64,000 nt of DNA, taken from contig JANJGN010000034.1 in NCBI GenBank assembly GCA_026770705.1, positions 13,020,001 to 13,084,000 on the forward strand. The letters run 5' to 3'. Below the pieces are notes generated by a model. The model ran no database searches. It saw only the letters and a program-made list of their open reading frames with translations, and was not told the origin of the DNA. Shown one piece after another: positions 1 through 50,664 of this stretch. Numbering within the stretch: position 1 is the stretch's first letter; each line of letters begins with the position of its first letter. Made by a program: the position numbers and the translations under genes. Source of the DNA: Isurus oxyrinchus. Its lineage: Eukaryota.

Positions 1-750
1 AGCCCCTACAACACTCCCTATCTCTGTTACCTCCTCCAGCCCCTACAATTCTCCCTATCTCTGTAACCTCCTCCAGCCCCTACAACTCTCCCTATCTCTG
101 TAACCTCCTCCAGCCCCTATAACCCTCCCTATCTCTGTAACCTCCTCCAGCCCCTACAACCCTCACTATCTCTGTAACCTCCTCCAGCCCCTACATCCCT
201 CACTATCTCTGTAACCTCCTGCAGCCCCTACAGCTCTCCCTATCTCTGTAACCTCCTCCAGCCCCTACAACCCTCCCTATCTCTGTAACCTCCTCCAGCC
301 CCTACAGACCTCCCTATCTCTGTAACCTCCTGCAGCCCCTACAACCCTCCCTATCTCTGTAACCTCCTCCAGCCCCTACACCCTCCCTATCTCTGTAACC
401 TCCTCCAGCCCCTACAGACCTCACTATCTCTGTAACCTCCTCCAGCCCCTACAACCCTCCCTATCTCTGTAACCTCCTGCAGCCCCTACAGCTCTCCCTA
501 TCTCTGTAACCTCCTCCAGCCCCTACAGACCTCACTATCTCTGTAACCTCCTCCAGCCCCTACAACCCTCCCTATCTCTGTAACCTCCTCCAGCCCCTAC
601 AACCCTCCCTATCTCCGTAACCTCCTCCAGCCCCTACAACCCTCCCTATCTCTGTAACCTCCTCCAGCCCCTACAACCCTCCCTATCTCTGTAACCTCCT
701 CCAGCCCCTACAACCCTCACTATCTCTGTAACCGCCTCCAGCCCTCATAA
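1..750 (+). repeat. 39-bp tandem minisatellite (cctccagcccctacaaccctccctatctctgtaacct..), about 19 copies, running off the window start
   Basis: Unit directly visible; it grades into the LINE-like tail at 751-1045. Confidence 0.95.
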
Positions 751-1045
751 CCATTTGAGATCTCTGCGCTCCTCTAATCCTGGCCTCTTGAACATCCCAC
801 AATTTGAATCACACCACGATTGGTGGCCGTGCCTTCAGCTGGGCTGAACGTCTCCCTAAACTTCTCTGTCTCCCTCCATCTCTTTCCTCCCTGTAACTTC
901 GTCCTTAGACTGAGATTTTGGGCACCTGAGTTAACACTGCTTTATGCTCAGTGACAACTATAGGTTTATACCGCTCTTGTGAAGCACCTTGGGATGTTTT
1001 ATCGCATTTGGGAGATACTAAGTAAATGCAAATGTTTGTTGTTGT
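751..1045 (+). mobile_element. Degenerate LINE 3' end, probably L2 clade
   Basis: ggtggccgtgccttcagc ... tgtgaagcaccttgggatgtttt ... aaatgcaaatgtttgttgttg resembles an L2-type 3' terminus with a short-repeat tail; recognised by eye. Confidence 0.55.
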
Positions 1046-1624
1046 ATTGAATTAAGTCAAAAAGGAAGTGAAATTGCAAACTTTGCAAAAGTGTTTGTGT
1101 ATGAGCTGGATCCCAGATAAATCAATCCAGCTTAATATAAACACCATTGCAGCCAGGCTGCCTTTTGCCTACCCAAGTATCTCTCTGTTAGGGTTACTCA
1201 ATCCTAATGTCGAAATCACTCCTCTCGAACTTCGCAATGCGAGTGGAGGCTTTTCACAACGATGTGAAAGATTTCTCTTTCCACTACACCTAATCCTGAA
1301 AGTGGAAGTTAGAACCACAACTGAGAGCAAATGGGAGCATGTTATTGTGCCCAGTTTCCCATGGAGTATAAGTGTCCCCGGAGAACTTCAATTAGCTGAG
1401 AGACTCAATGACTGAAGCACAACAAGCTTTCGGGCGGAACAGACTGCTTTCTTTCATGGGAGCTTTACTACAGATACTAAGCATCCAAAAGCAGCTACTG
1501 ACACGTTCATTTCTACTCCCGATGTCTACTGATGACGTTCATAGGCAATTCTGGTAAAGTGAATCTTTCACTGCTGGTTGGTCAGCTGCTGTAAATTGAC
1601 AGGTGAGTAGGTGTATAGGCAGGT

Positions 1625-7600: not shown

Positions 7601-9900
7601 AGGCAGGCAGGAGGGAACAAGGCAGAGAGACAGGCAGGCGGGTATAGGCAGAGAGACAGGCAGGCGGGTGGGTACAAGGCAGATATATAGGCAGGCAGGT
7701 GGGTACAAGGCAGAGAGACAGGCAGTGGAAACAAGGCAGATAGACAGGCAGGTGGGTACAAGGCAGAGAGACAGGCAGGCAGGTGGGTACAAGGCAGAAA
7801 GACAGACAGGCAGGAGGGAACAAGGCAGAGAGACAGGCAGGCAGGAGGGAACAAGGCAGAGAGACAGGCAGGCAGGTGGGTACAAGGCAGAGAGACAGGC
7901 AGGTGGAGGGAACAAAGCAGAGAGACAGGCAGGCAGGTGGGTACAAGGCAGAGAGACAGGCAGATGGGTGGGTACAAGGCAGAGAGACAGGCAGGCGATA
8001 ATAAGGCAGAGAGACAGGCAGGCGGGTATAAGGCAGAGAGACAGGCAGGTGGGTGGGTACAAGGCATAGAGACAGGCAGGTGGGTGGGTACAAGGCAGAG
8101 AGATACGCAGGCGGGTATAAGGCAGAGAGACAGGCAGGTGGGTATAAGGCAGAGAGACAGGCAGGCGGGTATAAGGCAGAGAGACAGGCAGGTGGGTATA
8201 AGGCAGAGAGACAGGCAGGCGGGTACAAGGCAGAGAGACAGGCAGGCGGGTGTGTTCAAATAAGAGAGACAGACAGGCAGCTGGTTACAAGGCAGAGAGA
8301 CAGGCAGGCAGGTACAAGGCAGAGAGACAGGCAGGCGGGTGGATACAAGGCAGAGAGACAGGCTGATGGGTGGGTACATGGCAGTGAGACATGCAGAAAT
8401 GTTGGTACAAGGCAGAGAGACAGGCAGGCAGGTGGGTACAAGGCAGAGAGACAGGCAGGCAGGTGGGTACAAGGCAGAGAGACAGGCAGGCGGGTGGGTA
8501 CAAGGCAGAGAGACAGGCAGGCAGGAGGGTACAAGGCAGAGAGACAGGCAGGCGGGTGGGTACAAGGCAGAGAGACAGGCAGGCAGGAGGGTACATGGCA
8601 GAGAGACAGGCTGTTGGGTGGGTATAAGGCAGAGAGACAGGCAGGTGGGTATAAGGCAGAGAGACAGGCAGGCTGGTATAAGGCAGAGAGACAGGCAGGC
8701 GGGTACAAGGCAGAGAGACAGGCAGGCGGGTATAAGGCAGAGAGACAGGCAGGTGGGTATAAGGCAGAGAGACAGGCAGGCGGGTACAAGGCAGAGAGAC
8801 AGGCAGGTGGGTACAAGGCAGAGAGACAGGCAGGTGGGTGGGTGCAAGGCAGAGAGACAGGCAGGTGGGTACAAGGCAGAGAGACAGGCAGGTGGGTGGG
8901 TGCAAGGCAGAGAGACAGGCAGGTGGGTACAAGGCAGAGAGACAGGCAGGTGGGTGGGTGCAAGGCAGAGAGACAGGCAGGCGGGTGTAAGGCAGAAAGA
9001 CAGGCAGGTGAGTGGGTGCAAGGCAGAGAGACAGGCAGGCAGGTGGGTGCAAGGCAGAGAGACAGGCAGGTGGGTGGGTGCAAGGCAGAGAGACAGGCAG
9101 GCGGGTATAAGGCAGAGAGACAGGCAGGTGTGTGGGTGCAAGGCAGAGAGGCAGGCAGGTGGGTATAAGGCAGAGAGACAGGCAGGCGGGTGAGTTCAAA
9201 GAAGAGAGTCAGCTGGGTACAAAGCAGACAGACAGGCAGGCAGGTTGGTACAAGGCAGAGAGACAGGCAGGTTGGTACAAGGCAGAGAGACAGGCAGGCA
9301 GGTACAAGGCAGAGAGACAGGCAGGCAAGTTGGTACAAGGCAGAGAGACAGGCAGGCGGGTGGATACAAGGCAGAGAGACAGGCAGGCAGGTGGGTACAA
9401 GGCAGAGAGACATGCAGGCGGGTGGATACAAGGCAGAGAGACAGGCAGGCAGGTACAAGGCAGAGAGACAGGCAGGCGTGTGGATACAAGGCAGAGAGAC
9501 AGGCTGATGGGTGGGTACATGGCAGTGAGACATGCAGAAATGTTGGTACAAGGCAGAGAGACAGGCAGGCAGGTGGGTACAAGGCAGAGAGACAGGCAGG
9601 CAGGTGAGTACAAGGCAGAGAGACAGGCAGGCGGGTGGATACAAGGCAGAGAGACAGGCAGGCAGGCAGGTACAAGGCAGGAAGACAGGCAGGCGTGTGG
9701 ATACAAGGCAGAGAGACAGGCAGGCAGGTGGGTACAAGGCAGAGAGACAGGCTGATGGGTGGGTACATGGCACTGAGATAGGCAGGCGGGTGGGTACAAG
9801 GCAGAGAGACAGGCAGGCAGGCGGGTACAAGGCAGAGAGACGGGCAGTGGGTACAAGGCAGAGAGACTGGCAGTCAGGTGGGTGCAAGGCAAAGAGACCT
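1625..9900 (+). repeat. 8.3-kb minisatellite, variable 27-35 bp unit (gggtacaaggcagagagacaggca[ggca]ggt)
   Basis: Continuous tandem units with recurring variant blocks; explains all long ORFs between 1568 and 9963. Confidence 0.98.
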
Positions 9901-10200
9901 GCAGACAGACAGACAGATAGATGGATGAAATATCAGGACATCGCTGAGATGGGCAGATGTTAGTTATACCTGGTGAAGTTGTCTGGAATTTGAGTTAATC
10001 CCATAAGACATTAGCCATTCCCCTCAGTGTTTTTGTCAAAATGTGATGTTTGTAGGTGCCAGCTGCTTTTGTTTTTTCCCAACTAGGGTTTCATTCAAAA
10101 TAAGCAATTTGGAATACAATATATCACATGACTGCCATCCTCAAAGACAGTAGATGTTAAATCGTTAAGACTGTCGGTCCTTTTCTTGGTAACTGCCATT

Positions 10201-10443
10201 TTATTTTTTGCTTTCAACCTTCCTTGTTCCTTTTTTGTTGCGTTTCTTGGCAAACCACATATTCCTCAGGAACTTGGGATCACCTCCTTTCAGGGGTTCA
10301 AATCGATAAGACTTGGGCTTTTTGATCCTTGTCCTGTGCCATTTGCTGGACTGATTGTTGTTGGTGTAATTCTGGCACTTGGCCATGACTCTCCACTGAT
10401 CTCCTGAACCTCCTGCTCCACCACCAGCAGCCACCGGAAGAGC
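10201..10443 (-). pseudogene. RPL29: Processed retrocopy of 60S ribosomal protein L29 (ORF 10386-10201, 61 aa) with 5' UTR
   Basis: [53 protein letters not shown] matches eL29 ([40 protein letters not shown]). Intronless, several conserved residues altered, upstream ctcttccgg resembles a 5'-TOP start. Confidence 0.9.
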
Positions 10444-10837
10444 ACAAGGAAGCAGTTCTCCCCTAGTTGCGTAAATGTGCTGCAGCTGTATTGCAATATA
10501 ACCCACCAATTAGATAAAGCACCATTTATCAGTACTCAGAGTCAGAGGAATCACACTCTGCTGAAACACCGTAGGTTATTAAACTGAATCCAAACTCCTG
10601 TGAGTGAGAATCCCCGCGGAGAAGGGAAATCGACTTCAAACCGAGATCTTTTGGGATTGAACCGTGGACATCTGCTCCATATAACGTCACCCAGGGAGAA
10701 AACTGAATCAAACAGCTGTAACGTTGAACACATGGAGACCAGCTAAAGGACAGTTAACTGTACATCCCTTTGATTGTTTTTTTCTTCACAAACTGTCAAA
10801 TGTTTTAAATATATCCTCTTATTCTACATTCTGTACT

Positions 10838-11400
10838 AGTGTGTGTGAGTGTGTGTGAGTCTGTATGTGTATGTGTGAGAGAGTATGTGAGAGTGAGAGT
10901 GAGTTTGGGTATGTGAGTGTGGGTGTGTGTGTGTGATTGATTATGTGTGTGTGTTAATGTGAGTGCATGTGTGTGTGCGTTTGTGTGTGAGCGTGTATAT
11001 GTATGTGTGAAAGTGTGTGGGTTTGTGGGCGTGTGAGTGTGTGTGCATGTGTCTATGTGCGAGTGTGTGCCTGTGTGTGTGTGTGAATGTGAGAGTGAGT
11101 TTGTGAGTGTGTGGGAGTGTGAGTGTGGATGTGAGTGTGTGTGTGTGTGTGTGTGTGTAAGTGCGTGTGCCTTTGTGTGTGTGTGTGATTGTGAGAGTGT
11201 GAGTGTTTGTTTGAATGTGTGAGTGTGTGTGTGTGTGTAATTGCGTGTGCCTTTGTATGTGTGAGTGTGACTGGGAGATTGTAAGTGTGAGTGTTTGTCT
11301 GAATGTGTGTGTGTGTGTGTGTGTGTGTGACTGTTAGTGTGTGAGTTTGTGTCAGTGAGTGTGAGTGTATGTCTGTGGGTGTGTGTGTGTGTGTGTGTGA
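10838..11400. repeat. Imperfect (GT)n microsatellite
   Basis: Directly visible. Confidence 0.95.
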
Positions 11401-11664
11401 CATATGAATGGTGAGGAAGATTTACCTAGCTGTTTTTTTTAATTCAGGAAGTATCTTCAATGAGTTTTTCTTGATCTTTGATTTAAGCTCAGAAAATGTG
11501 TCTGATCAATTCTTTATAATCTGAAGGTGCACATAGTGGGTCCCCTGCAGTATTGACAAAGCACATTCTTGCTAAATTCACAACAAAAATCCTAGAACAG
11601 CCAGACCTGGAGTAGTAAATCGAGGGAGTTAATTTTTACTCTTGTCTCGTGGTTGTAAAAGAGG

Positions 11665-12388
11665 TCATCTGTAAAGGAAGAGTTTGTTAGAAAGACAGTT
11701 AGCTGTAAGCTGCAGGAGGATATCAATGGACTGGACAGATGGGCAGGTCAGTGGCAAATGGAATTCAACACGGAAAAGTTTGGGGTAATGCACTTGGGGA
11801 GGGCTAACAAGGCAAGGGGTTACACTAGGAATGGTAGAACCCTGGAAAGTACTGGAGATCAGAGAGACCTTGGTGTGCCTATGCACAGATCCCTGAGGGT
11901 AGCTGGGCAGGTAGATGAAGTGGTTAAGAAGACATATGGAGCTACTTGCCTTTAATAGCTGGGGCATGGAATACAAGAGCAGGGAGGTTATGCTGGAACT
12001 GCGTAAAGTGCTGGTTAGACCACAACTGGAGTACTGTGTGCAGTTCTGGTAACCACATTGTAGGAAGGGTGTGATTGCACTGGAGAGGGTGCAGAGGGGA
12101 TTTACCAGGATGCTGTCTGGGCTGGAGAGTCTGAGCTATGAGGAAAGATGGATAGGCTGGGGTTGTTTTCCTTGGAGCAGTGAAGATTGAGAGGGGTAAA
12201 AACAAAAAACTGCGGATGCTGGAAATCCAAAACAAAAACAGAATTACCTGGAAAAACTCAGCAGGTCTGGCAGCATCGGCGGAGAAGAAAAGAGTTGATG
12301 TTTCGAGTCCTCATGACCCTTCGACAGAACTTGATTTCGAGTCCAAGAAAGAGTTGAAATATAAGCTGGTTTAAGGTGTGTGTGTGTG

Positions 12389-12428
<40 letters not shown>

Positions 12429-13720
12429 GATAGAGAGAGAGAGAGAGGTGGTTGTGTAGACAAACAAGCAGTGATAGAAGCAGATCATCAAAAGATGTCA
12501 GCGACAATGGTGCAAAAGAACACATAGGTGTTAAAGTTAAAGTTGGTGATATTATCTAAACGAATGTGCTAATTAAGAATGGATGGTAGGGCACTCAAGG
12601 CTCTAGTGGGGGTGGGGGGAGCATAAAAGATTTTAAAATATTTAAAAATAATGGAAATAGGTGAGAAAAGAAAAATCTATATAATTTATTGGGGAAAAAA
12701 AAGGGGGGAAACAGAAAGGGGGTGGGGATGGGGGGGGGGATCTCACGACCTGAAGTTGTTGAATTCAATATTCAGTCCGGAAGGCTGTAAGGTGCCTAGT
12801 CGGAAGATAAGGTGTTGTTCCTCCAGTTTGCGTTGGGCTTCACTGGAACAATGCAGCAAGCCATGGACAGACATGTGGGCAAGAGAGCAGGGTGGAGTGT
12901 TAAAATGGCAAGCGACAGGGAGGTTTGGGTCATTCTTGCGGACAGACCGCAGGTGTTCTGCAAAGCGGTCGCCCAGTTTACGTTTGGTCTCTCCAATGTA
13001 GAGGAGACCACATTGGGAGCAACGAATGCAGTAGACTAAGTTGGGGGAAATGCAAGTGACATGCTGCTTCACTTGAAAGGAGTGTTTGGGCCCTTGGACG
13101 GTGAGGAGAGAGGAAGTGAAGGGGCAGGTGTTACATCTTTTGCGTGGGCATGGGGTGGTGCCATAGGAGGGGGTTGAGGAGTAGGGGGTGATGGAGGAGT
13201 GGACCAGGGTGTCCCGGAGGGACCAATCCCCACGGAATGCCGATAAGGTGGGTGAAGGGAAGATGTGTTTGGTGGTGGCATCATGCTGGAGTTGGCCGAA
13301 ATGGCGGAGGATGATCCTTTGAATGCGGAGGCTGGTGGGGTGATAAGTGAGGACAAGATTGAGAGGGGACCTGATAGAGGTGTATAAGATTACGAGGGGC
13401 ACTTTTTCCATCAGTAGAAGGGTCAACAACCAGGGAGCACAGATTTAAGGTAAGAGGTAGAAGGCTAAGAGGGGAGTTGAGGAGAAATATTTTCACCCAG
13501 AGGGTGGTGAGAATCTGGAGCTCACTGCTTGAAAGGGTGGTTGAGTCAGAAACTCATGTAATATTTAAGAAGTATTTAGATATCCCTTTGCATTGCCAGA
13601 GCCTCCAAGGCTATGGGCCAAATGCTGGAAAATGGGATTAGTGTGATCAGATCTTTGTTGACCAGTGCGGACATGATGGGCCGAATGGCTTCCTTCTGTG
13701 CTGTAAACATCTGTGAGCCT
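11665..13720 (+). mobile_element. CR1-clade LINE 3' fragment (11665-12196 and 13355-13720), interrupted by a PLE
   Basis: Remnants WQMEFNTEK..VMHLG, RDLGV, RPQLEYCVQFW and FTQRVVRIW; the frame resumes after the insertion. Confidence 0.9.
12197..13354 (-). mobile_element. 5'-truncated Penelope-like element (GIY-YIG endonuclease plus 3' UTR) with 14-bp TSD
   Basis: ORF contains NLVYCIRCSQCGLLYIGET..RFAEH..GLN; aagattgagagggg at 12183-12196 and 13355-13368. Confidence 0.93.
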
Positions 13721-14381
13721 ACTCTATGAGTTAACAAAGAAAGGAATTCTAGCCAGAGAGGACAAAGTGATGACAGGCTACTGCTTGGACACAGTTGTGT
13801 AACAGAATGTCTAACTTCAGATGCATGAGTTACTGGAATTAATTCTTTCACCAGAATTCATATGGTCTGACCGAGGTGCGGATGTGGCTTCAGGAAGTCT
13901 GAAAGCAAAAGTAAATTCAGTGGGCTGGATTGCAGGGAATTGCAAAATTGTTACAGCACGTGAGGAGGCCATTCAGCCCATTGTGTCAGTGCTGGTCTAC
14001 CATGTCGATTGTTCTCTCCTTGCTTCTAACCACTGCTGTTGTTACGGGTAAGTTTTAGAGAAGCGATTATTCCGCTATGTATTCTCAATCAGCTTGTTTA
14101 ACATTCCATTCGAATGGTGGTAGAACAACAATTTATACTGCATGAGAGGAGAGCGCTGATCGGTTGGTAAGCGGACTCATGGTAATGCCTTGACCAATCA
14201 GAGTTGGCCTGCCTGGTTTGAGTTTCAACAAAAGCTCGGCAGTTAACTGTTTCCTGGTGCATTCTCCATGGCAACACCTCTACCATTCAGAGTCCACTTG
14301 GTGAAGGTGGCAGGACACCAGGCTAGCAGAATTGTTGTTGCTTCACCCGTCCTTCACATACATGCAGCTGTTACTTTAGCT

Positions 14382-14451
14382 ATGAATTTCTTTCACTTGA
14401 ATCGAACGCCATCCATAATTGGCATCCTCTTAGTCCTTGGATGCTGCTCAT
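14382..14451 (+). CDS. IgV-ITAM receptor, putative exon 1 (signal peptide MNFFHLNRTPSIIGILLVLGCCS)
   Basis: ATG at 14382, hydrophobic core, 70-nt phase-1 exon 114 bp upstream of the V exon; donor T|GTGATG is weak. Confidence 0.55.
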
Positions 14452-14565
14452 GTGATGCTCAATAAAAACTCGAGCGAAGTTTCATGTCACTTCCCACGTG
14501 TTCAGGACTGCGCATGAGATTTTACGCAGCCGGGTTCCTGAAATTGTATCACATCGCTCTTACAG

Positions 14566-14913
14566 GTGGCGTTAGGGGCGGCAAGGGTGAATGCCCGGAG
14601 GTGAATTTTAATGGGTCCCACTCCGTGTCACTACATTGCTCTGACCCATCCTACGCAAGAGCAACCCTCGTCCAGTGGCGCTGGACGGACTCACTGGGAA
14701 AGTGGAAAGAGCTCCTTCTCCTACAAGTCCTGAACGGGAATGTCACGGAGCACCCAGGCCGGTCCGACCTGGGCCTCTCCAGAGAGAGGTGCGTGGAAAG
14801 TGGAGACTGCTCACTGACTATGACACCTACAGGAGATGATGTTGGGCTCTACCATTGCGTTGTGTGGACCAACGCGCGGATTACTGAAGAACAGTCCCTC
14901 CTGGCATATAAAG
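14566..14913 (+). CDS. IgV-ITAM receptor, exon 2 (V-set Ig domain)
   Basis: ctcttacag| acceptor, G|gttaga donor, 348 nt, phase 1-1; SVSLHC, VQWRW, GDCSLTM, DVGLYHC. Confidence 0.9.
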
Positions 14914-15239
14914 GTTAGAGTTTTATCCTGATAGATTCCATACGCAGAACGTATCTTCAGAAGAGAATCCCGAAATGACCAAGGGGTCTTTTAATTGCTT
15001 GGCCCTTGAGTCATGTAGAGAAGGGACTGGAAAACACATCTGTCCCTTGAGACCAGTAAATTCCCCAACAATAGGACTTGCATTTATATAGCTCCTTTCA
15101 CAGCCGCCTGACATCCTTTGTGGAGTAGTCACTGTTGTTGTTGTTGTCAGACAGGAAATGCAGCAGCCAATTTGCGCACAGCAAGCTCCCACCAACAGCA
15201 ATGTGTTGGGGGCCCCACCCATCAGTGCTGTTTCTATTC

Positions 15240-15578
15240 AATCATGGGGATGCAGGCATCACTGGGCCAGGCCAGCATTTATTACCCATCCCTTATTACC
15301 CTAGTTCAGAGGTCATTTAAGAGTCAAACCACATTGCTGTGTGGGTCTGGAGTCACATGTAGGCCAGACCAGGTGAGGACAGAGGATTTCCTTCCCTAAA
15401 TGGCATTGGTGAACCAGATTTTACAACAATCAGCAGTGGTTTTGTGGTCATCATTAGACTTTTAATTCTGGATTTTTATTGAATTCAAATTCCACCATCT
15501 GCTGTGGAGGGAATCAAACCCTGGTTCCCAAAGAATTGCCCTGGGGTCTCTGGATTACTACTCCAGCGATAATACCAC
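15240..15578 (-). mobile_element. tRNA-derived SINE; further copies near 41705-42630 (split by a CR1), 48535-48840, 52790-53090 and 60490-60770
   Basis: Shared core ctggcctacatgtgactccagacccacagcaatgtgg and box-B-like ggttcaaatccc; tail gggcaataaatgctggc is shared with the LINE at 58520-59375. Confidence 0.8.
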
Positions 15579-16299
15579 NNNNNNNNNNNNNNNNNNNNNN
15601 NNNNNNNNNNNNNNNNNNNNNNNNNNNNNNNNNNNNNNNNNNNNNNNNNNNNNNNNNNNNNNNNNNNNNNNNNNNNNNNNNNNNNNNNNNNNNNNNNNNN
15701 NNNNNNNNNNNNNNGTGCGTATGTGCANNNNNNNNNNNNNNNNNNNNNNNNNNNNNNNNNNNNNNNNNNNNNNNNNNNNNNNNNNNNNNNNNNNNNNNNN
15801 NNNNNNNNNNNNNNNNNNNNNNNNNNNNNNNNNNNNNNNNNNNNNNNNNNNNNNNNNNNNNNNNNNNNNNNNNNNNNNNNNNNNNNNNNNNTGTTCTCCT
15901 TCAAAATAGAACCAGCGGGTCCTTCGCCACCCACCCGAGCCTCTCCTAAAAGCTGGCACCTCTGACAGTGCAGCACTCCCCCAGTGCCGCCGCTGGGGTG
16001 ACAGGCCCTGATTTCAGCACGCAAGCCCTGGAGTGGGGCTTGAACCCAGAACCTCGCTGCCAACTGAGGGGCAGCTAAGCACAGACGTGGAAAGCACAGA
16101 CGTCAGTGTCGCATGGTGATTCCGCATGGAATCACGGGTTTGCCAAATTTGAGACTTACAGAGGGCAGCCAAAATGTAATTTGTCAGAATTCAAGAGCAG
16201 TCAAAGTGGGGTCAATAAGGCACACGGCTACTAGCTAGGGGTGTTTACGAAGTAGGCAAAGCCCTCATACCCGCACACAATTGTATTTATAAATCAGAG

Positions 16300-16950
16300 A
16301 TAAAAACAAAAAACTGCGGATGCTGGAAATCCAAAACAAAAACAGAATTATCTGGAAAAACTCAGCAATTCTGGCAGCATCGGCGGAGAAGAAAAGAGTT
16401 GACGTTTCAAGTCCTCATGACCCTTCAACAGAACTAAGTAAAATTAGGAGAGGGGTGAAACATAAGCTGGTTTAAGGTGGGGGGGGTCGTGGGGGGAGAG
16501 AAGCCGTGGGGGTGGTTGTAGGGACAAGCAAGCAGTGATAGGAGCAGATAATCAAAAGATGTCACAGACAAAAGAACAAAGGGGTGTTGAAGATGGTTCT
16601 GTCCAAGGGTCATGAGGACTCGAAACGTCAACTCTTTTCTTCTCTGCCGATGCTGCCAGACCTGCTGAGTTTTTCCAGATAATCCTGTTTTTGTGTTGAA
16701 TGTGGTGATATTATCTAAACGAATGTGCTAATTAAGAATGGATGGTAGGGTACTCAAGGTATAGCTCTAGTGGGGGTGGGGTGAAATAAGACTAAAAGGG
16801 CATAAAAGGTATAGATTTAAAAATAATAGGTGGGAAAAGAAAAATCTGTATAAATTATTGGAAAAAACAAAAGGAAGGGGGGAGAAACGGAAAGGGGGTG
16901 GGGATGGAGGAGGGAGTTCAAGACCTAAAGTTGTTGGAATCAGTATCAGT
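16300..16950 (-). mobile_element. PLE 3' end containing a short oppositely oriented PLE 3' piece (about 16592-16694)
   Basis: Same tail as 12197-12750; the inner piece is the reverse complement of 16335-16432 and is flanked by gtgttgaa on both sides. Confidence 0.85.
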
Positions 16951-17191
16951 CCAAATCTATTGTTACAGCCAAAGCTGGTTAAAGCAGTAGGGCCCTCCAG
17001 GTGTCTCAAAATGTTGCTGCTGCCAGTGTGATCAGAAATACTCGCTCGAGGATATCAGTCTGGGGTTTGGAGGTCAATGTAAAACCTCTGAGGGCCCGTC
17101 TCTGTAAGCAGCCCACCAGTTGCAACGTGCCTCTGTTGTCGGGCGGTTCGGAGCAGTTTTCTAAGTCCCTTCGGTTTCTGTTCCTCCACAG

Positions 17192-17308
17192 CGGGCCTCA
17201 AGGCTGTCCGAGCGACCTACGTGGCTGTGGGGGTCTGCGGGGGTTTGCTGCTTCTCCTGGCTCTCGTCGGGTTGGCTTGGATCTGCAGGCGAAAAGGCAG
17301 AGGTCAGG
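17192..17308 (+). CDS. IgV-ITAM receptor, TM exon (AGLKAVRATYVAVGVCGGLLLLLALVGLAWICRRKGRGQ)
   Basis: ttcctccacag| acceptor, G|gtgagt donor, 117 nt, phase 1-1; hydrophobic helix followed by RRK. Confidence 0.9.
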
Positions 17309-18171
17309 GTGAGTGTGAGGGGCCAAAAGGCCATTGGGTGAGGTAGGGTCTGGAATCGATCCGGGGTATCGCTTGGTGGCCCGCTGTTACCGCCCCCCCC
17401 CCCCACCCCAGATGTTGTCAGCTTGATGTGGGTTCAGTTAGCAAGTCCCTGTGGGGAACATCAATCGCGTTAACCATTGCACTTCACCTTCACCACCCCC
17501 ATCTCCGTTAAGCAGCTGAATGGGAATTAGTAAGTAGAACAATGTGGGAACAATGTGGCCGATAGTCTGCAGCCAGTAGTTGGATGTACTTGGGTGACTT
17601 GAAGCGTCCGGGCTACGTGCCGAGTGCTGGGAGATGGGGTTAGGAATGGACAGGTGCTTGATGGCCAGCACGGACAGGATGGGCCGAAGGGCCTGTTTCC
17701 GTGCTGTACGGCACTGTGACTCCATGACTCATTGCGTCGGGCCGCATTTTAACCCCCAAACCCCCCCCCACCCCCGACCTTTCCCCCTGCTGTCGTTCAA
17801 ACAGTCGACAACGAGGTGCCCGCCCCTTCCACATCCACTGCAGCGCGGTGGAAAGATCAGGCGTGGGCTGTTTCTGGGCGGGCGATTAGACACTTCGGCC
17901 GCTTTCCTAGGCCGCTGGCCAGCGACCACTGGCGTTGACATAGCGCCTTCAACCAACCACATGGGTCGTGCGAGTCAGGCAACAGTGAGCAGGAGCTTAT
18001 CAACAAACACCATAGAAAGCTGGACCCCTTTACTCCTCGCTCGCTCTGCCAGCGCAGGGTAGAACATTATGAACAGTGAGGACCGATTTTGGATGTGAAT
18101 CGGGGGTGGCTTGTTTTTCCCTTGAATATCCCATGTCTAATCTTGCTTTGTTTTCCTTTATGCCACTGCAG

Positions 18172-18191
18172 CTCAGAGTTCTGAATCCCAG
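18172..18191 (+). CDS. IgV-ITAM receptor, cytoplasmic micro-exon (AQSSESQ)
   Basis: Pyrimidine tract plus ctgcag| acceptor, CAG|gtaggc donor, 20 nt, phase 1 to 0 as the next exon requires. Confidence 0.8.
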
Positions 18192-18729
18192 GTAGGCGAT
18201 GATTTAATAAAAGTCGTTGACGAAAATGTTGCCAATCACCGTTATCTTGTAGCCCAATCCTGTTGCTTTAAAAATGTAGCAAATAATTGCCCGTGTACTT
18301 TGGATAACTTTCACCGGGACAAACACAAGAGTACCAAATTGCATTCACACCAGTTCATGCTGCAATAATACAATCATTATGATAACACTTATTATTAATA
18401 AATACTATGATTTGCTTATTTTTCAATGTTTTGCCTCTCCATGGATGATTAATTCATAATCGCCCTGTGACACCATCTTTTTAAGCAGCTTGGCACACAA
18501 ACCAGCATTAATGTCTATCTCCAGGATTATTGTTTACCTTTTTTCAAGTGGACCACTCTAAACATCCACTAAAATGGCAGGGGAAGAATTTCAGGTTCAA
18601 AGATCCCTCCATGATAACCAATGGCCTCATTTCAAAATTTAACTAAAAAAAGATGTTAAGATCATGAAATGACACTTCTGGTAGCAAATGTACACATTTA
18701 GCACTTGGTGTCAACTGTCTCTAGCCCAA

Positions 18730-21150
18730 CGCCTCCTCCTTTACTCCGCCTCCTCCTTTACTCCACCTCCTCCTTTACTCCGCCTCCTCATTTACACCGC
18801 CTTCCGCCTCGTCCATTACTCCACCTCCGCCTTTTCTCCGCCTCCACATTTACTTCGCCTCCTCCTTTACTCCACCTCCTCCTTTACCCCGCCTCCTCCT
18901 TTACCACGTCTCCTCCTTTACTCCGCCGCCTCCTTTACTCCACCTCCTCCTTTACCCCGCCTCCTCCTTTACCACGTCTCCTCCTTTACTCCGCCGCCTC
19001 CTTTACTCCACCTCCTCCTTTACCCCGCCTCCTCCTTTACCACGTCTCCTCCTTTACTCCGCCGCCTCCTTTACTCCACCTCCTCTGTTACTCCTCCTCC
19101 TCCTTTACTTTGCCTCCTCCTTTACTCCACCTCCTCCTTTACTCCACCTCCTTTACTCCGCCTCCTCCTTTACTCCACCTTCCCCTTTACTTTGCCTCCT
19201 CCTTTACTCCGCCTTCTGCTTTACTCCGCCTTCTGCTTTACTCCTCCTCCTTTACTCCGCCTCCTCCATTACTCCGCCTCCTCCTTTACTCCACCTCCTC
19301 CTTTACTCCACCTTCCCCTTTACTTTGCCTCCTCCTTTACTCCACCTCCTCCTTTACTCCGCCTTCTCCTTTACTCCGCCTTCTGCTTTACTCCACCTCC
19401 TCCTTTACTCCGCCTCCTCCTTTACTCCGCCTTCTCCTTTACTCCGCCTCCTCCATTACTCCGCCTCCTCCTTTACTCCGCCTCCTCCTTTACTCCACCT
19501 CCTCCTTTACTCCACCTCCTCCTTTACTCCACCTCCTCCTTTACTCCTCCTCCACCTTTACTCCGCCTCTTCCTTTACTCCACCTTTCCCTTTACTTTCT
19601 CTCCTCATTTACTCCACCATCTCCGTTACTCCACCTCCTCCTTTACTCCACCTCATTTACTCCGCCTCCTCCTTTACTCCGCCTTCTCCTTTACTCCACC
19701 TCCTCCTTTACTCCACCTCCTTCTTTACTCCACCTCCTCCTTTACTCCGCCTTCTCCTTTACTCCACCTCCTCCTTTACTCCACCTCCTTCTTTACTCCA
19801 CCTCCTCCTTTACTCCGCCTTCTCCTTTACTCCACCTCCTCCTTTACTCCGCCTCCTCATTTACACCGCCTTCCGCCTCGTCCATTACTCCACCTCCTCC
19901 TTTACTCCACCTCCTCCTTTACTCCACCTCCTTCTTTACTCCACCTCCTTCTTTACTCCACCTCCTCCTTTACTCCGCCTTCTCCTTTACTCCACCTCCT
20001 CCTTTACTCCACCTCCTTCTTTACTCCACCTCCTCCTTTACACCGCCTTCTCCTTTACTCCACCTCCTCCTTTACTACACCTCCTCCTTTACTCCGCCTT
20101 CTCCTTTACTCCACCTCCTCCTTTACTACACCTCCTCCTTTACTCCACCTCCTTCTTTACTCTGCCTCCTTCTTTACTTTGCCTCCTCCTTTACTCCGCC
20201 TCCTCCTTTACTACACCTCCTCCTTTACTCCGCCTCCTCCTTTACTCCGCCCCCTCCTTTACTCTGCCTCCTCCTTTACTCCGCCCCCTCCTTTACTCCG
20301 CCCCCTCCTTTACTCCGCCTCCTCCTTTACTCCGCCTCCTCCTTTACTCCGCCTCCTCCTTTACTCCACCTCCTCCTTTCCTCCACCTCCTCCTTTACTC
20401 CACCTCCTCCTTTACTACACCTCCTCCTTTACTCCACCTCCTCCTTTCCTCCACCTCCTCCTTTACTCCACCTCCTCCTTTACTCCACCTCCTCCTTTCC
20501 TCCACCTCCTCCTTTACTCCACCTCCTCCTTTACTCCACCTCCTCCTTTCCTCCACCTCCTCCTTTACTCCACCTCCTCCTTTACTACACCTCCTCCTTT
20601 ACTCCACCTCCTCCTTTACTCTGCCTTCTCCTTTACTTTGCCTCCTCCTTTACTCCACCTCCTCCTTTACTCCGCCTCCTCCTTTACTCCGCCCCCTCCT
20701 TTACTCCGCCTCCTCCTTTACTCCACCTCCTCCTTTCCTCCACCTCCTCCTTTACTCTGCCTTCTCCTTTACTTTGCCTCCTCCTTTACTCCACCTCCTC
20801 ATTTACTTTGCCTCCTCCTTTACTCCACCTCCTTCTTTACTCTGCTTCCTCCTTTACTCCACCTCCTCCTTTACTCCACCTCCTCCTTTACTCCACCTCC
20901 TCCTTTACTACACCTCCTCCTTTACTCCACCTCCTCCTTTACTTTGCCTCCTACTTTACTCCACCTCCTCCTTTACTCCTCCTCCACCTTTACTCCGCCT
21001 CTTCCTTTACTCCACCTTTCCCTTTACTTTCTCTCCTCATTTACTCCACCTCCTCCTTTACTTTGCCTCCTACTTTACTCCACCTCCTCCTTTACTCCAC
21101 CTCCTCCTTTACTCCACCTCCTCCTTTACTCCACCTCCTCCTTTACTCCC
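18730..21150. repeat. 17-bp pyrimidine-rich minisatellite (actccacctcctccttt)n, 2.4 kb, intronic
   Basis: Directly visible; explains ORFs at 18688-21220. Confidence 0.97.
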
Positions 21151-21799
21151 CCATCTGCTGAGCAAGTGTTATTGCAGGATTACTAGGTTCATTGTGGAGG
21201 TGGAGCTAATAATTTTTTGAAATTTATGGGATGTGGGCATCACTGGCTGGGCCAACATTTATTGCCCATCCCTAATTGCCCCTTCAGAAGGTGGTGGTGA
21301 GCTGCCTTGAGCCACTGCAGTCCCTGCAGTGTAGGTACACCCACAGCGCTGTTAGGGAGGGAGTTCCAGGATTTTGACCCAGCGACAGTGACGGTACAAT
21401 AGCATCAAACTAAGGGCACAACGATTGGTTTTAAAATGGGGGTTTGGATGACGGCTCAGTGCCGAGAATTCCCCACCATCTTCCACACATCTTAAATATT
21501 GCAGCTGATCACAACTCCCTGATGCGGAAGTAATTGTTCAACAGGCTGGGTAAGATCAGGCCTTTCTCCTTGCATCACTGAGTAGACCCTGATCCTCAAA
21601 TGGGCACTAGTGAGTCAGCAACCCATTTCACACCTGGCTTCATTTTTACTCCCTGTTGACTTCAATAATATCCAGATGTATTTGATAGTAATAATACCAG
21701 CGTCAGTGAACTGTTCTCTGTTGCCTTTGTTAATAGTAGTTAGTAATGGTTATTAATAGCCAGAGAAAGGTCACTTTCTGTTGTGTTCATTAATTACAG

Positions 21800-21832
21800 A
21801 ATCAAAGAAGAAACTTAGATTCGACTTACATG
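21800..21832 (+). CDS. IgV-ITAM receptor, cytoplasmic exon (NQRRNLDSTYM), first ITAM tyrosine
   Basis: taattacag| acceptor, ATG|gtaagc donor, 33 nt, phase 0-0. Confidence 0.85.
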
Positions 21833-21939
21833 GTAAGCGTGCGAGCAGATTTACTACCTCACAGTTTCTTCCTTTAACATGACGGAGTTATCCAGCCGGG
21901 TTAAATGTCCATTCATGCTTTTTCTCATTTTCTACAAAG

Positions 21940-21987
21940 GGCCTGAACTTGAGTGACCGTCAGCTTTACAGCAATCTGGGGTGGTAA
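21940..21987 (+). CDS. IgV-ITAM receptor, last coding exon (GLNLSDRQLYSNLGW*), completes the ITAM
   Basis: tttttctcattttctacaaag| acceptor; completes YMGL-x7-YSNL; TAA at 21985-21987. Confidence 0.85.
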   Translation, partial: GLNLSDRQLYSNLGW

Positions 21988-22489
21988 GATCAGATTTCTC
22001 GATTTGAAATAGCCACAGGGTCATTATGGCACTGAAGGAGGCCGTTCGGCCTATCGAGGGCCGGCTAGCTCTCCGCCGAGCAGCCCAGTCGGTCCCCTCC
22101 TTCCGCTCTATCCCTCTGCACCCCCCCCCCCCCACAAATTCATTCTCCCCCCACTTGCCGATCTGATTTTCCTTTGAAATCATTCACCGCCTCCCCTTCC
22201 ACCACCCTCGTGGGCAGCGGGTTTTGGGTCAATGCTCACCGCATTGAAAAAGCTCTCTCTCGTATTCCACCACCCCCCCGCCCCACCCACCCACCGTTTC
22301 TCTTGCCCCCGAAACCTTACTTCTGTGTCCCTTAGCCTCTGTGCCAATGGGTAAAGAGAATGAATTTTTTTTTGCCACCTCATCTAAACCTGTCAGAACC
22401 TTGTCCAGCTCCATCAAACCTCCCCTCAGCTCCAAGGGGAAGGAGCCCAGCTCCTCCAGCCTGAGCTTAAAACCCAGAACACCCCATTA

Positions 22490-23065
22490 CCATAAGGCCA
22501 TAAGACATAGCAGCAGAAGTAGGCCATTCAGCCCATCGAGTCTGCTCTGCCATTCAATGAGATCATGGCTGACCTGATAATCCTCAACTCCACTTTCCTG
22601 CCTTTCCCCCATAATTCTTAATTCCTTTACCGATTAAAAATCTGTCCATCTCAACCTTGAATATACTTAGCGACCCAGACTCTACAGCCCTCTGCGGTAA
22701 AGAATTCCACAGATTAACTACCCTCTGAGAGAAGAAATTCCTCCTCATCTCTGTTTTAAATGGGTGACCCCTTACTCTGAGATTATACCCTCTGGCCCTA
22801 GACTCTCCCACAAGGGGAAACAACCTCTCAGCATCTACCCTGTCAAGCTACCTAAGAATCTTATTTGTTTCAATAAGGGTCGCCTCTCATTCTTCTAAAC
22901 TCCAATGAGTATAGGCCCAACCTACTCAATCTCTCCTCATAAGAAATTCCCTCCCTACCTGGAATCAATCTGGTGAACCTTCTCTGGACTTCCTCCAAGG
23001 CCATTATATCTTTCCTTAGATAAGGGGACAAAAACTGTTCACAATATTCTAGATGTGGTCTAATG
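22490..23065 (-). mobile_element. CR1-clade LINE 3' fragment
   Basis: [49 protein letters not shown]; short-repeat tail ccataag. Confidence 0.92.
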
Positions 23066-24150
23066 TGCTTTACCAATTGCTTTAGTTTTGTTAACATTTA
23101 ATAGCGTTCTGAGAATCTGTAGGGTTTACAGTACATGCTTGTTTACCTTTGCAAAGCTTTGTGTTTTATCCATGCTTCTCAAATCAATCCAATTAACACG
23201 AATATTCCACTTTTCAACTAACAGATGTTTGCAGGAGCCACTGTGGACCCAGTGAAAAGCTATTGCTTTGAAGGTCAATGTGACCAGTGGCCCAGCAGAG
23301 ATTATTCTCGAATTCACTTCCCTTCGCCGACCAGATATCATTTACGTTTGCTGATTCGATATATTTAAACAATTAGCTGCACAAATCAAATTCAAAGTAC
23401 TATGGTTGTGAATCATATAAACAGTTGTGGAGGGATACTCTCTTCACCACCTGTAGGGGGAGTGCTGAATGACAGAAATGGGAGCACAAGGAGGACATTC
23501 AGCCCATTTATCCTGTCCACCATTCAATACGATCATGGCTAATCTTCTACCTCNNNNNNNNNNNNNNNNNNNNNNNNNNNNNNNNNNNNNNNNNNNNNNN
23601 NNNNNNNNNNNNNNNNNNNNNNNNNNNNNNNNNNNNNNNNNNNNNNNNNNNNNNNNNNNNNNNNNNNNNNNNNNNNNNNNNNNNNNNNNNNNNNNNNNNN
23701 NNNNNNNNNNNNNNNNNNNNACACGCTCTCTCTCTTGCACTCCCTCTCTTCTTGTTCCTTCTAATTCCTCTTTGAAATTCAAACAACCTCACAACTTATC
23801 TACACATGTAAATGTTAGCTTGTCCATCTCCATTTCAAAATGCTTGTTTTTATATCCAAACCTTTTAATGATTTGAACCTTGCAGTCTGACTGTCTTCAG
23901 TTTAATTAAATTAGCCACACACTCACACATGTGTACACACACAAACACACACACTATTCACACTCTCACAAACAGACAGACACACACAGAGGAATACACA
24001 CATCCTCACCCACACATGCACACACTGGCACACACAAACACACACGCACTCACTATACACACACACTCACACACAGACATAGACACACACACACTCTCTC
24101 TCACACACACACACACTCACACAGAAACTCACAGACACACATGCACACAC

Positions 24151-26484: not shown

Positions 26485-27824
26485 AAACAAAAACAGAATT
26501 ACCTGGAAAAACTCAGCAGTTCTGGCAGCATCGGCGGAGAAGAAAAGAGTTGACGTTTCGAGTCCTCATGACCCTTCGACAGAACTTGAGTTCGAGTCCA
26601 AGAAAGAGTTGAAATATAAGCTGGTTTAAGGTGTGTGTTGAGGGGGGGGGGGGGTGCGGAGAGAGAGAGAGAGAAGTGGAGGGGGTTGGTGTGGTTGTAG
26701 GGACAAACAAGCAGTGATAGAAGCAGATCATCAAAAGATGTCACCAACAATAGAACAAAACAACACATAGGTGTTAAAGTTGGTGATATTATCTAAACGA
26801 ATGTGCTAATTAAGAATGGATGGTAGGGCACTCAAGGTATAGCTCAAGTGGGGGTGGGGAGAGCATAAAAGATTTTAAAATATTTAAAAATATTGGAAAT
26901 AGGTGGGAAAAGAAAAATCTATATAATTTATTGGAAAAAAAACAAAAGGAAGGGGGAAACAGAAAGGGGGTGGGGATGGGGGAGGGAGCTCAAGACCTAA
27001 AGTTGTTGAATTCAATATTCAGACCGGAAGGCTGTAAGGTGCCTAGTCGGAAGATAAGGTGTTGTTCCTCCAGTTTGCGTTGGGCTTCACTGGAACAATG
27101 CAGCAAGCCAAGGACAGACATGTGGGCAAGAGAGCAGGGTGGAGTGTTAAAATGGCAAGCGACAGGGAGGTTTGGGTCATTCTTGCGGACAGACCGCAGG
27201 TGTTCTGCAAAGCGGTCGCCCAGTTTACGTTTGGTCTCTCCAATGTAGAGGAGACCACATTGGGAGCAACGAATGCAGTAGACTAAGTTGGGGGAAATGC
27301 AAGTGACATGCTGCTTCACTTGAAAGGAGTGTTTGGGCCCTTGGACGGTGAGGAGAGAGGAAGTGAAGGGGCAGGTGTTAAATCTTTTGCGTGGGCATGG
27401 GGTGGTGCCATAGGAGGGGGTTGAGGAGTAGGGGGTGATGGAGGAGTGGACCAGGGTGTCCCGGAGGGAGCGATCCCTACGGAATGCCGATAAGGGGGGT
27501 GAAGGGAAGATGTGTTTGGTGGTGGCATCATGCTGGAGTTGGCGGAAATGGCGGAGGATGATCCTTTGAATGCAGAGGCTGGTGTGGTGATAAGTGAGGA
27601 CAAGGGGGACCCTATCATGTTTCTGGGAGGGAGGAGAAGGCGTGAGGGCGGATGGGCGGGAGATGGGCCGGACACGGTTGAGGGCCCTGTCAACGACCGT
27701 GGGTGGAAAACCTCGGTTAAGGAAGAAGGAGGACATGTCAGAGGAACTGTTTTTGAAGGTAGCATCATCGGAACAGATGTGACGGCGGTGAAGGAACTGA
27801 GAGAATGGGATGGAGTCCTTACAG
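26485..27824 (-). mobile_element. PLE inverted arm (RT C-terminus, GIY-YIG, 3' UTR)
   Basis: ORF 26990-27970 with KDSIPFSQF and NLVYCIRC..LYIGET; reverse complement of about 28730-30060. Confidence 0.95.
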
Positions 27825-47231: not shown

Positions 47232-47410
47232 CTGTAAAATTCCAAGCAGAGGGGGTGTTATTCTATTTATTGCATGGGCAAGCGATGAATGAAATCTTCC
47301 CATTGAGCACCTTGATCACTGTACACATTGTCCCGTCCAGGCAGCTCCTCGTTTCCACGCAATGGGGACATTGGCATTAAAATGCAACAGCACACTTTCT
47401 TGGAGTTTAC

Positions 47411-50540: not shown

Positions 50541-50664
50541 TGTTATCATACTCATTGTTGGCCTGTGGTTATATAAATGATTCAACAACGCAGTTCATGT
50601 ATTAATCAGGCAGTTTCAGTTGGGTTTTTTTTTTCTCAGAATAACTTCCTCCTCTGATACTTAC

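What the first reader, a model, noticed from the sequence alone, without database searches (positions are those of the whole stretch)
14382..21987. Hidden single-IgV receptor with its own ITAM, assembled from micro-exons
Seen: six exons with GT-AG sites and matching phases give about 211 aa: signal peptide, IgV, TM, and tail ..RNLDSTYM|GLNLSDRQLYSNLGW*. Known: DxxYxxL-x7-YxxL is a canonical ITAM, and an intron inside the first YxxL is typical of ITAM adaptor genes such as CD3 and FcR-gamma. The TM has no charged residue and there is no CxxC stalk motif, so it is not an obvious CD3, CD79 or DAP12. Inference: a self-signalling activating receptor with NFAM1-like architecture. The V domain looks G6f/G6b/LAG-3-like by eye only. 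Exons of 20, 33 and 48 nt are easily missed by annotation.
Basis: partly seen in the sequence, partly recalled or inferred. Interest (0 to 1): 0.88.

Follow-up and report, generated by a model that had tools for sequence, protein, structure and literature searches.

The report
Shark single-Ig receptor with built-in ITAM
This is a real, expressed shark gene for a small cell-surface protein with one antibody-like domain and its own activating signal motif (ITAM); it is conserved in sharks and rays, listed in gene databases only as "uncharacterized", and belongs to a known kind of receptor.

Summary

RNA-derived contigs from three runs and two shark species lack that 107-nt intron.

Two corrections:
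- **First exon.** The family's signal peptide lies at 14002-14047, giving about 203 aa rather than 211.
- **3' end.** The transcript seems to leave exon 6 at a donor overlapping the TAA and resume near 23.2 kb. Only the last residue is affected.

The N gap lies inside intron 2, and orthologues show no missing residues there.

One-to-one orthologues exist in at least 14 sharks and rays, all named "uncharacterized protein". No paper mentions them. The ITAM tyrosines are (nearly) invariant.

No relative was found outside elasmobranchs. The NFAM1 Ig profile is not matched, CD3/CD79 hallmarks are absent, and the fold is a generic V-set.

Some orthologues carry a different TM/tail module (YxN plus ITAM), which a neighbouring two-Ig gene shares.

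Verdict: an undescribed elasmobranch family of a known kind, an in-cis ITAM receptor. Signalling is inferred. The scan had not found it on other DNA.

The parts
1532..1553 (+). Alternative upstream first exon (MTFIGNS plus 1 nt, donor GTAAAG, phase 1). It has no signal peptide.
   Evidence: Same N-terminus as white shark isoforms X2 and X5. Its use in this species is not shown.
14002..14047 (+). Exon 1: start codon and signal peptide MSIVLSLLLTTAVVT(G), donor GTAAGT, phase 1.
   Evidence: tblastn gives 100% identity to the basking shark model. Same N-terminus as white shark isoform X1. Fits the family consensus.
14382..14451 (+). Unsupported.
   Evidence: The ORF and a GT are present, but no orthologue or isoform carries this peptide.
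14566..14913 (+). Exon 2: V-set Ig domain of 116 codons, phase 1 to 1. It has five cysteines and two N-glycosylation sequons.
   Evidence: Translation. Pfam V-set E 1.3e-4; orthologues pass the cut-off. AlphaFold2 pLDDT 85. V-set fold at Z about 14. 94-95% identical to white shark.
15579..15891 (.). Assembly gap (two N runs around a 13-nt island) inside intron 2.
   Evidence: No coding frame crosses it, and orthologues show no residues missing between exons 2 and 3.
17192..17308 (+). Exon 3: short stalk, uncharged TM (YVAVGVCGGLLLLLALVGLAWIC) and the basic stop-transfer stretch RRKGRGQ. Phase 1 to 1.
   Evidence: Conserved as 'type 1' in lamniform and orectolobiform sharks, Heptranchias and rays.
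18172..18191 (+). Exon 4: 20-nt micro-exon (A)QSSESQ, phase 1 to 0.
   Evidence: The same peptide is in white shark and Heptranchias, and similar ones in rays. The 3-nt overhang CAG in contigs of X1 and X3 fits a direct 4-to-5 join (inference).
18732..21149 (.). 17-nt minisatellite, about 142 copies, filling most of intron 4.
21800..21832 (+). Exon 5: 33-nt micro-exon NQRRNLDSTYM, holding the first half of the ITAM up to Yx. Phase 0 to 0.
   Evidence: Joined to exon 6 in RNA contigs of X1, X3 and X7.
21940..21987 (+). Exon 6: GLNLSDRQLYSNLG(W) and TAA, holding the second half of the ITAM. A donor TG|GTAAGA at 21983/21984 overlaps the stop.
   Evidence: Joint 21831/21939 GT..AG. Bin depths imply the fit ends at about 21983 (my arithmetic).
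23218..23400 (+). Downstream exon, 3' UTR or last codon. The same RNA contigs resume here, next to the acceptor AG at 23223-23224.
   Evidence: table 8: records 8, 16 and 32 have the same depths as the ITAM joint. Sequence.

Best explanation
This is a functional, transcribed gene of a lamniform shark. It encodes a type I membrane protein of about 203 aa.

The protein has a cleavable signal peptide and one V-set Ig domain with the canonical disulphide plus three further conserved cysteines. A stalk of about 9 residues follows, then a transmembrane helix without charged residues, then a tail of about 40 residues ending in one canonical ITAM.

The likely mechanism, inferred from the motif:
- An unknown ligand or clustering brings receptors together.
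- A Src-family kinase phosphorylates both ITAM tyrosines.
- The tandem SH2 domains of a Syk/ZAP-70 kinase dock on the tail.
- The cell is activated or takes up the bound particle, without a separate adaptor chain.

The gene is the lamniform orthologue of a single-copy family found across sharks and rays.
For: Shown:
- Intact exons with consensus splice sites and compatible phases.
- The intron inside the ITAM is absent from contigs of three small (48-155 Mb) runs of two species, so the gene is spliced and expressed.
- Orthologous protein models exist in at least 14 elasmobranchs. The Ig-domain tree follows the orders.
- In 13 aligned proteins the second ITAM Tyr and Leu are invariant and the first Tyr, Leu and Asn are at least 90% conserved.
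- The domain folds as a V-set: pLDDT 85, Z about 14.

From the literature:
- A phase-0 split of YxxL is the hallmark of genuine ITAM and ITAM-like exons (PMC5112662).
- ITAM-in-cis Ig receptors signal through Src and Syk kinases. Teleost G6f-like needs both ITAM tyrosines (PMC3528668). NFAM1 is an ITAM-bearing receptor (PMC8793151).
Against: - No functional data, and no tissue or cell type is known because the run labels are coded.
- No single record was shown to run from the Ig exon to the ITAM exons in this species. That link rests on orthologue models and on contig-length arithmetic.
- The runs are only guessed to be RNA.
- The ligand is unknown.
- Five ectodomain cysteines and two TM cysteines leave room for a disulphide-linked partner, so 'self-sufficient' is not proven.
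- An ITAM can also act as an inhibitory or endocytic motif.
Confidence: 0.7

Rival explanations
1. It is a very diverged orthologue or paralogue of a named vertebrate gene: NFAM1, G6F/G6F-like, a CEACAM3-type member of the CEACAM cluster, or CD79/CD3. On this reading it is not a family of its own.
For: - It has the same architecture as NFAM1 and CEACAM3.
- It lies next to a nectin/PVR-like gene. In my recollection CEACAM genes, CD79A and PVR/NECTIN2 share human 19q13.
- The type-2 tails of some orthologues carry YxN plus ITAM, as in teleost G6f-like and Xenopus CEACAMs (PMC3528668, PMC5112662).
- The Atlas structure search lists 'g6f-like' first, at TM 0.50.
- LAG-3 D1 is 25-27% identical.
Against: - phmmer over 1.84 billion representatives found, outside elasmobranchs, only generic multi-V-domain teleost proteins without ITAM tails and one bacterial repeat protein.
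- The NFAM1 Ig profile is not matched.
- No CEACAM, CD79 or CD3 chain appears in the PDB profile search at E up to 1, nor among the listed fold hits.
- The window's tail has no YxN.
- There is no acidic TM residue and no CxxC.
- Sharks have a bona fide CD79a (PMC4034164).
Confidence: 0.15
2. The protein is not a stand-alone activating receptor. It would instead be a signalling subunit or decoy. Either it is disulphide-linked to another chain, as CD79a/b are, or it acts as an endocytic/phagocytic or inhibitory-ITAM module. Ig-less isoforms might serve as an adaptor-like chain.
For: - The odd number (5) of conserved ectodomain cysteines and a conserved TM cysteine in most type-1 members.
- White shark RefSeq isoforms X4 and X5 skip the Ig exon, giving proteins of 93-101 aa with a TM and an ITAM.
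- The TM/tail module is shared with a two-Ig gene.
Against: - There is no charged TM residue to recruit a partner by the usual route.
- The Ig-less isoforms are computed models, not shown in this species.
- Nothing here points to a particular partner.
Confidence: 0.12
3. The model is an artefact: either a decaying pseudogene, or exons of two neighbouring genes joined by eye.
For: - The gene lies between large satellite arrays and repeats, with an assembly gap in intron 2.
- The white shark's extra 42-nt exon is missing here.
Against: - All coding exons are intact, and the Ig exon is 94-95% identical to white shark.
- Every ordering of exons matches the orthologue models.
- The ITAM exons are spliced in RNA contigs.
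- Runs found with the Ig exon alone also hold the ITAM joint.
Confidence: 0.03

Closest known systems
[quoted passage not shown]
   Same: A type I protein with one Ig domain, a TM without a charged residue (that TM feature is from my memory) and one ITAM in its own tail. [quoted passage not shown]
   Different: The Ig domain does not match Pfam Ig_NFAM1. No sequence hit to any NFAM1 in three database searches. The tail is much shorter. Synteny was not tested.
Teleost G6f-like (G6fL) and tetrapod G6F
   Same: An Ig receptor with an ITAM in cis, split over two exons. G6fL also has a YxN Grb2 site (PMC3528668), as do the type-2 tails of the catshark, Mustelus and Heterodontus orthologues. There are weak structural leads.
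   Different: G6fL has four Ig domains. The window's tail has no YxN. There is no significant sequence similarity. The genomic setting (MHC-linked or not) was not tested.
CEACAM3 and ITAM-bearing CEACAMs of Xenopus
   Same: An N-terminal IgV, a TM and a tail built from several small exons. The ITAM or ITAM-like motif is split by a phase-0 intron and often preceded by YxNx (PMC5112662). Tail and ectodomain exchange between neighbouring genes occurs. A PVR-like gene is the neighbour.
   Different: No CEACAM chain in the PDB profile search or among the listed fold hits. No inhibitory twin with a similar Ig domain lies in this 64-kb window.
CD79a/CD79b and CD3 gamma/delta/epsilon
   Same: One Ig domain, a TM, and one ITAM with the same Yx|xL intron. 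The YxGLNL start of the ITAM resembles CD79a (from my memory).
   Different: No acidic or polar TM residue, no CxxC stalk, no sequence match. Sharks have their own CD79a (PMC4034164).

Membership tests
ITAM-bearing immunoreceptors (defined by motif) | D/E-x-x-Y-x-x-L/I, then 6-8 residues, then Y-x-x-L/I, in the cytoplasmic tail. | tested here: met
   DSTYMGL, 7 residues, YSNL. Conserved across 13 orthologues.
ITAM-bearing immunoreceptors (defined by motif) | First YxxL split Yx|xL by a phase-0 intron. | tested here: met
   Exon 5 ends ...TAC ATG, and exon 6 starts GGC CTG. The intron is removed in RNA contigs. The hallmark is described in PMC5112662.
ITAM-bearing immunoreceptors (defined by motif) | Tyrosine phosphorylation and Syk/ZAP-70 recruitment. 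| not testable with these tools
   Needs cell experiments.
V-set immunoglobulin domain | Match to the V-set profile and the V-set fold. | tested here: met
   Window exon: 22.6 bits, below the 26-bit cut-off. Orthologues: 29.5-31.8 bits. AlphaFold2 model with Z about 14 to V-set domains.
NFAM1 | NFAM1-type Ig domain (Pfam PF25830). | tested here: not met
   1 of 13 members, E 0.063, 14.1 bits against a cut-off of 27.2.
NFAM1 | Conserved synteny with vertebrate NFAM1. | not tested
CD3 / CD79 signalling chains | Acidic or polar TM residue and membrane-proximal cysteines (CxxC in CD3) for assembly with an antigen receptor. | tested here: not met
   The TM has no D, E, K or R, and the stalk AGLKAVRAT has no cysteine.
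G6F / G6F-like | YxN Grb2 site upstream of the ITAM, and several Ig domains (four in teleosts). | tested here: not met
   The window's tail has no YxN, and no such exon was found in intron 4. There is one Ig domain. Some orthologues do carry YVNV.
G6F / G6F-like | Sequence or structural kinship of the V domain. | tested here: inconclusive
   Atlas structure row 'g6f-like' at TM 0.50. LAG-3 D1 is 25-27% identical but tied with many V-sets. No phmmer hit.
CEACAM | N-domain kinship, and a location in the CEACAM cluster beside PVR/NECTIN2. | tested here: inconclusive
   A PVR-like gene is the neighbour. No CEACAM chain in the PDB profile search or among the listed fold hits. Flanking markers such as LIPE and BCL3 are not in the window.
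PVR/nectin-like receptors (TIGIT type) | V-domain motifs (V/I)(S/T)Q, A-x6-G and T(F/Y)P. The motifs are from my memory. | tested here: not met
   Absent from the exon 2 translation. The neighbouring gene's V exon at 52268-52756 has VVQ, AVYNPFFG and a VFP close to the third motif.

The most novel reading that the evidence does not exclude
The family would be an elasmobranch-wide orphan that preserves an old 'Ig domain plus ITAM in one chain' arrangement, inside a nectin/PVR-linked receptor cluster. In that cluster, TM/ITAM exon modules move between genes: type-1 versus type-2 tails on orthologous Ig domains, and the same tail on a two-Ig gene. Ig-skipping isoforms would yield adaptor-like chains. 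That would give a living model for how separate ITAM adaptors and receptors arose.
Probability: 0.12. Interest if true: 0.75.

Novelty: new member of a known kind. Interest (0 to 1): 0.42.

Why it matters
Cartilaginous fish are the oldest living lineage with antibody- and T-cell-based immunity, yet few of their innate activating receptors are described.

A single-copy ITAM receptor kept for the whole history of sharks and rays probably marks a specific blood-cell function, such as activation or uptake. It would be an easy handle for that function, through an antibody, a reporter chimera or a single-cell marker.

The tail exchange between its orthologues and a neighbouring gene shows how signalling modules are reassigned in receptor clusters.

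It also gives annotators a concrete case. Micro-exons of 20 and 33 nt are modelled in some RefSeq shark genomes and lost in others.

Tried and rejected
Rejected in favour of 14002-14047.
- **Extra YxN exon.** I looked in intron 4 for the white shark's extra 14-residue exon and for any YxN exon. None was found. An in-frame extension of exon 4 to 18248 would create YLN, but the 3-nt CAG overhang in contigs of X1 and X3 does not support it.
- **Read laying.** Junctions 14913/17192, 17308/18172 and 18191/21800 therefore remain unseen in reads.
- **Joined protein.** Searches used single exons by reference and database orthologues.
- **Searches for named relatives.** None was found by a PDB sequence search with the exon and with the family profile (best hit TIM-1, E 0.009), by fold searches (generic V-set), or by searching with the two-Ig relative P0063.
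- **Teleost hits.** The multi-V-domain proteins have no ITAM tails.
- **Literature.** Searches for the RefSeq locus names returned nothing.


Full report
**What is in the sequence**

| Exon | Coordinates | Content |
|---|---|---|
| 2 | 14566-14913 | 348 nt, phase 1 on both sides, flanked by AG and GT. One Ig domain with the landmark Cys, Trp and D-x-G-x-Y-x-C. |
| 3 | 17192-17308 | Nine-residue stalk, a hydrophobic stretch of about 23 residues with no charged residue, then RRKGRGQ. |
| 4 | 18172-18191 | 20 nt. Shifts the phase from 1 to 0. |
| 5 | 21800-21832 | 33 nt, phase 0. Ends in ...DSTYM. |
| 6 | starts 21940 | GLNLSDRQLYSNLGW, then TAA. |

Together exons 5 and 6 give D-x-x-Y-x-x-L, seven residues, Y-x-x-L. 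The intron falls between the second and third residues of the first YxxL. A CEACAM study calls that position and phase 'characteristic' of ITAM and ITAM-like motifs (PMC5112662).

**The first exon is elsewhere**

The Ig exon was searched by reference, using the uninterrupted ORF 14484-14915 restricted to residues 29-144. It found nine shark proteins of 200-247 aa, the best at 94% identity from white shark.

Laying those proteins on the window placed the first 16 residues of the basking shark model at 14002-14049 with 100% identity.

The sequence there is ATG followed by 15 codons, one further base, and GTAAGT. That is phase 1, as exon 2 requires.

White shark isoform X1, listed under four transcript accessions, starts with the same peptide, and it fits the family consensus.

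With the corrected exon the protein has about 203 residues.

A second, upstream first exon is also conserved. At 1532-1553 the peptide MTFIGNS plus one base is followed by GTAAAG, matching white shark isoforms X2 and X5. It carries no signal peptide.

**The assembly gap**

The N runs at 15579-15714 and 15728-15891 lie inside intron 2 (14914-17191), between repeat-like sequence. No reading frame crosses them.

In white shark and all other orthologues, the last residues of the Ig domain are followed directly by the stalk and TM. No residues are unaccounted for, so no coding exon is expected in the gap.

The junction 14913/17192 therefore has no direct read support here.

**Expression and splicing**

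The Ig exon alone retrieved 15 runs from six studies. The tool only guesses that these are RNA. Their contig sets are small (48-155 million letters), while the DNA-sized runs in the same list hold 1.6-2.5 billion.

Four runs were laid on 21200-23400. A joint 21831/21939, bounded by GT..AG and skipping 107 nt, appears in X1 and X3 (organism A, one sample) and X7 (organism B). This is exactly the intron inside the ITAM, and it shows the contigs derive from spliced RNA.

The following points are my inferences from that output:

- **Exon 4 to exon 5.** The left side of the joint is 35 letters in X1 and X3: exon 5 plus CAG, the last three letters of exon 4. In X7 it is 33 letters, which fits a different upstream exon in organism B.
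- **End of exon 6.** Dividing bin depth by contig depth gives about 44 covered letters in exon 6. The fit therefore ends near 21983, where TG|GTAAGA is a good donor overlapping the TAA.
- **Downstream exon.** Contigs with the same depths as the joint (76.3, 33.5 and 46.6) resume at 23218, 23224 and 23221, beside an AG at 23223-23224.
- **Contig length.** In X3, the 215 letters ahead of that point nearly equal exons 3, 4, 5 and 6 together (117+20+33+44 = 214).

So the transcript probably has a further 3' exon. The last residue may be W (unspliced), C (join at 23218, giving TGC then TAA) or absent (join at 23225, giving TGA). The ITAM is complete in every case.

The joints 17308/18172 and 18191/21800 thus rest on orthologue models.

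**The family**

A profile of nine members found further members, all named 'uncharacterized protein':

- zebra shark;
- the sevengill shark Heptranchias;
- sawfish;
- a stingray;
- a devil ray;
- an electric ray.

An exhaustive phmmer pass over 1.84 billion representative proteins with the Ig exon gave only four family clusters at E below 1e-25. Beyond those it found multi-V-domain teleost proteins without ITAM tails and one bacterial repeat protein.

A maximum-likelihood tree of the Ig domains groups the window with white shark and basking shark (support 100/100). It recovers carpet sharks, catsharks and rays as separate groups. The genes therefore behave as one-to-one orthologues.

In 13 aligned proteins the second ITAM tyrosine and leucine are invariant, and the first tyrosine, leucine and the following asparagine are at least 90% conserved. 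All five ectodomain cysteines are invariant or nearly so.

I found no member outside elasmobranchs. At this sensitivity, that is absence of evidence only.

**Two tail modules**

Orthologous Ig domains are attached to two different TM/tail types.

- **Type 1.** The TM contains GVCGG, followed by the micro-exon ...SSESQ and an ITAM without YxN. It occurs in the window, white shark, carpet sharks, Heptranchias and all rays.
- **Type 2.** The TM reads IIVGIILAVIGV, followed by YVNVP (a YxN site) and then the ITAM. It occurs in Heterodontus, the two catsharks and Mustelus.

The type-2 module also ends a two-Ig protein in Heterodontus (P0062) and Heptranchias (P0063). In Heterodontus the two genes lie on the same contig, and their stalk, TM and tail differ at a single residue.

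The first domain of P0063 aligns weakly with the family's Ig domain: 27% identity, pairwise E 0.002. The alignment includes an unusual cysteine before the E strand.

Type 1 is the more widespread and is probably ancestral. Type 2 looks acquired from the two-Ig neighbour by exchange or conversion. This rests on computed protein models and needs the DNA.

**Differences from white shark, and uneven annotation**

White shark has an extra 14-residue exon between exons 4 and 5. It reads like a tandem copy of exon 5 (compare NHRGNNINLNATYV with NQRRNLNSTYM). No trace of it was found in the window's intron 4, which is mostly a 17-nt minisatellite of about 142 copies.

The micro-exons do trouble annotation:

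- The basking shark model runs on into the intron after the TM exon. Its tail matches the window's intron translation at 17309-17363.
- The zebra shark model lacks exon 5.
- One sawfish isoform lacks the TM exon.

**What it is like**

Pfam sees only V-set. The NFAM1 Ig profile is not matched. The family profile's best PDB hit is TIM-1 at E 0.009.

An AlphaFold2 model of the window's Ig exon with nine orthologues has pLDDT 85.

- **VIA-align** gives tied matches at Z 12-14.6 to B7-H6, JAML, CAR, nectin-1, CD4 D1, VSIG4 and P0.
- **Foldseek** ranks CAR D1 first. LAG-3 D1 has the highest identity, 25-27%.
- **ESM Atlas** lists a teleost 'g6f-like' cluster first by structure, at TM 0.50.

These are leads, not assignments.

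The neighbouring gene on the minus strand (exons near 47.3, 50.7 and 52.5 kb) has a V domain with the VVQ and A-x6-G motifs of the nectin/PVR family, plus a VFP close to the third. The motifs are from my memory. The Ig domain studied here lacks them.

**Mechanism**

Shown:
- a conserved, spliced gene with this architecture.

Inferred from established ITAM biology:
- phosphorylation by Src-family kinases on clustering;
- docking of Syk/ZAP-70;
- activation or uptake.

This is how NFAM1 (PMC8793151) and teleost G6f-like work. In G6f-like, mutation of either ITAM tyrosine abolishes signalling (PMC3528668).

The uncharged TM argues against the usual adaptor pairing. The odd cysteine count leaves covalent dimers or partners open.

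**Novelty and verdict**

The kind, an Ig receptor with an ITAM in cis, is known. The family is unnamed. It is absent from the papers I could search, including by RefSeq locus name, but it is already present as automatic models in RefSeq.

I rate it a new member of a known kind, of moderate interest. The tail-module exchange and the setting beside nectin/PVR-like receptor genes are the parts most worth following. Earlier notes of this scan describe such genes just beyond the window.

Noticed in passing
window 1620-9898: An 8.3-kb satellite, 31-nt unit, about 280 copies. It lies between the alternative first exon at 1532 and the main first exon at 14002, so it sits inside the gene's first intron when the upstream exon is used.
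   Followed up: partly
window 18732-21149: A 17-nt minisatellite of about 142 copies at 86% match fills intron 4. This is the interval where white shark models an extra 42-nt exon.
   Followed up: partly
white shark proteins P0049, P0050 (no window coordinates): RefSeq isoforms X4 and X5 skip the Ig exon. They give chains of 93-101 aa with almost no ectodomain, the TM and the ITAM, which is an adaptor-like form. Whether this species makes them is unknown.
   Followed up: no
proteins P0062 (Heterodontus), P0063 (Heptranchias): A two-Ig (V plus I-set) gene carries the same YVNVP-plus-ITAM TM/tail module as the single-Ig orthologues of Heterodontus and the catsharks. In Heterodontus the two tails differ at one residue. 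No copy of its ectodomain lies in this window.
   Followed up: partly
window 47316-52756, minus strand: Nectin/PVR-like gene with V, C and C exons. Its V exon has VVQ and AVYNPFFG, plus a VFP close to the third PVR-family motif. I did not check that.
   Followed up: no
window 21983-23400: A donor TG|GTAAGA overlaps the stop codon of exon 6, and the RNA contigs continue in an exon starting at 23218-23225. A splice after the stop, or one that recodes the last codon, is unusual. The three runs give slightly different boundaries.
   Followed up: partly
window 18192-18248: Reading on past the exon 4 donor stays in frame for 57 nt to a GT. Joined to exon 5, this would create a YLN (YxN) site. The RNA overhangs do not support its use.
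   Followed up: partly
window 12743-13429, 26990-29563, 54983-56283, 63421-63972: Several copies of a retroelement ORF on both strands, with a reverse-transcriptase-like part and a conserved C-terminal block ending ...LNIEFNNFRS.
   Followed up: no
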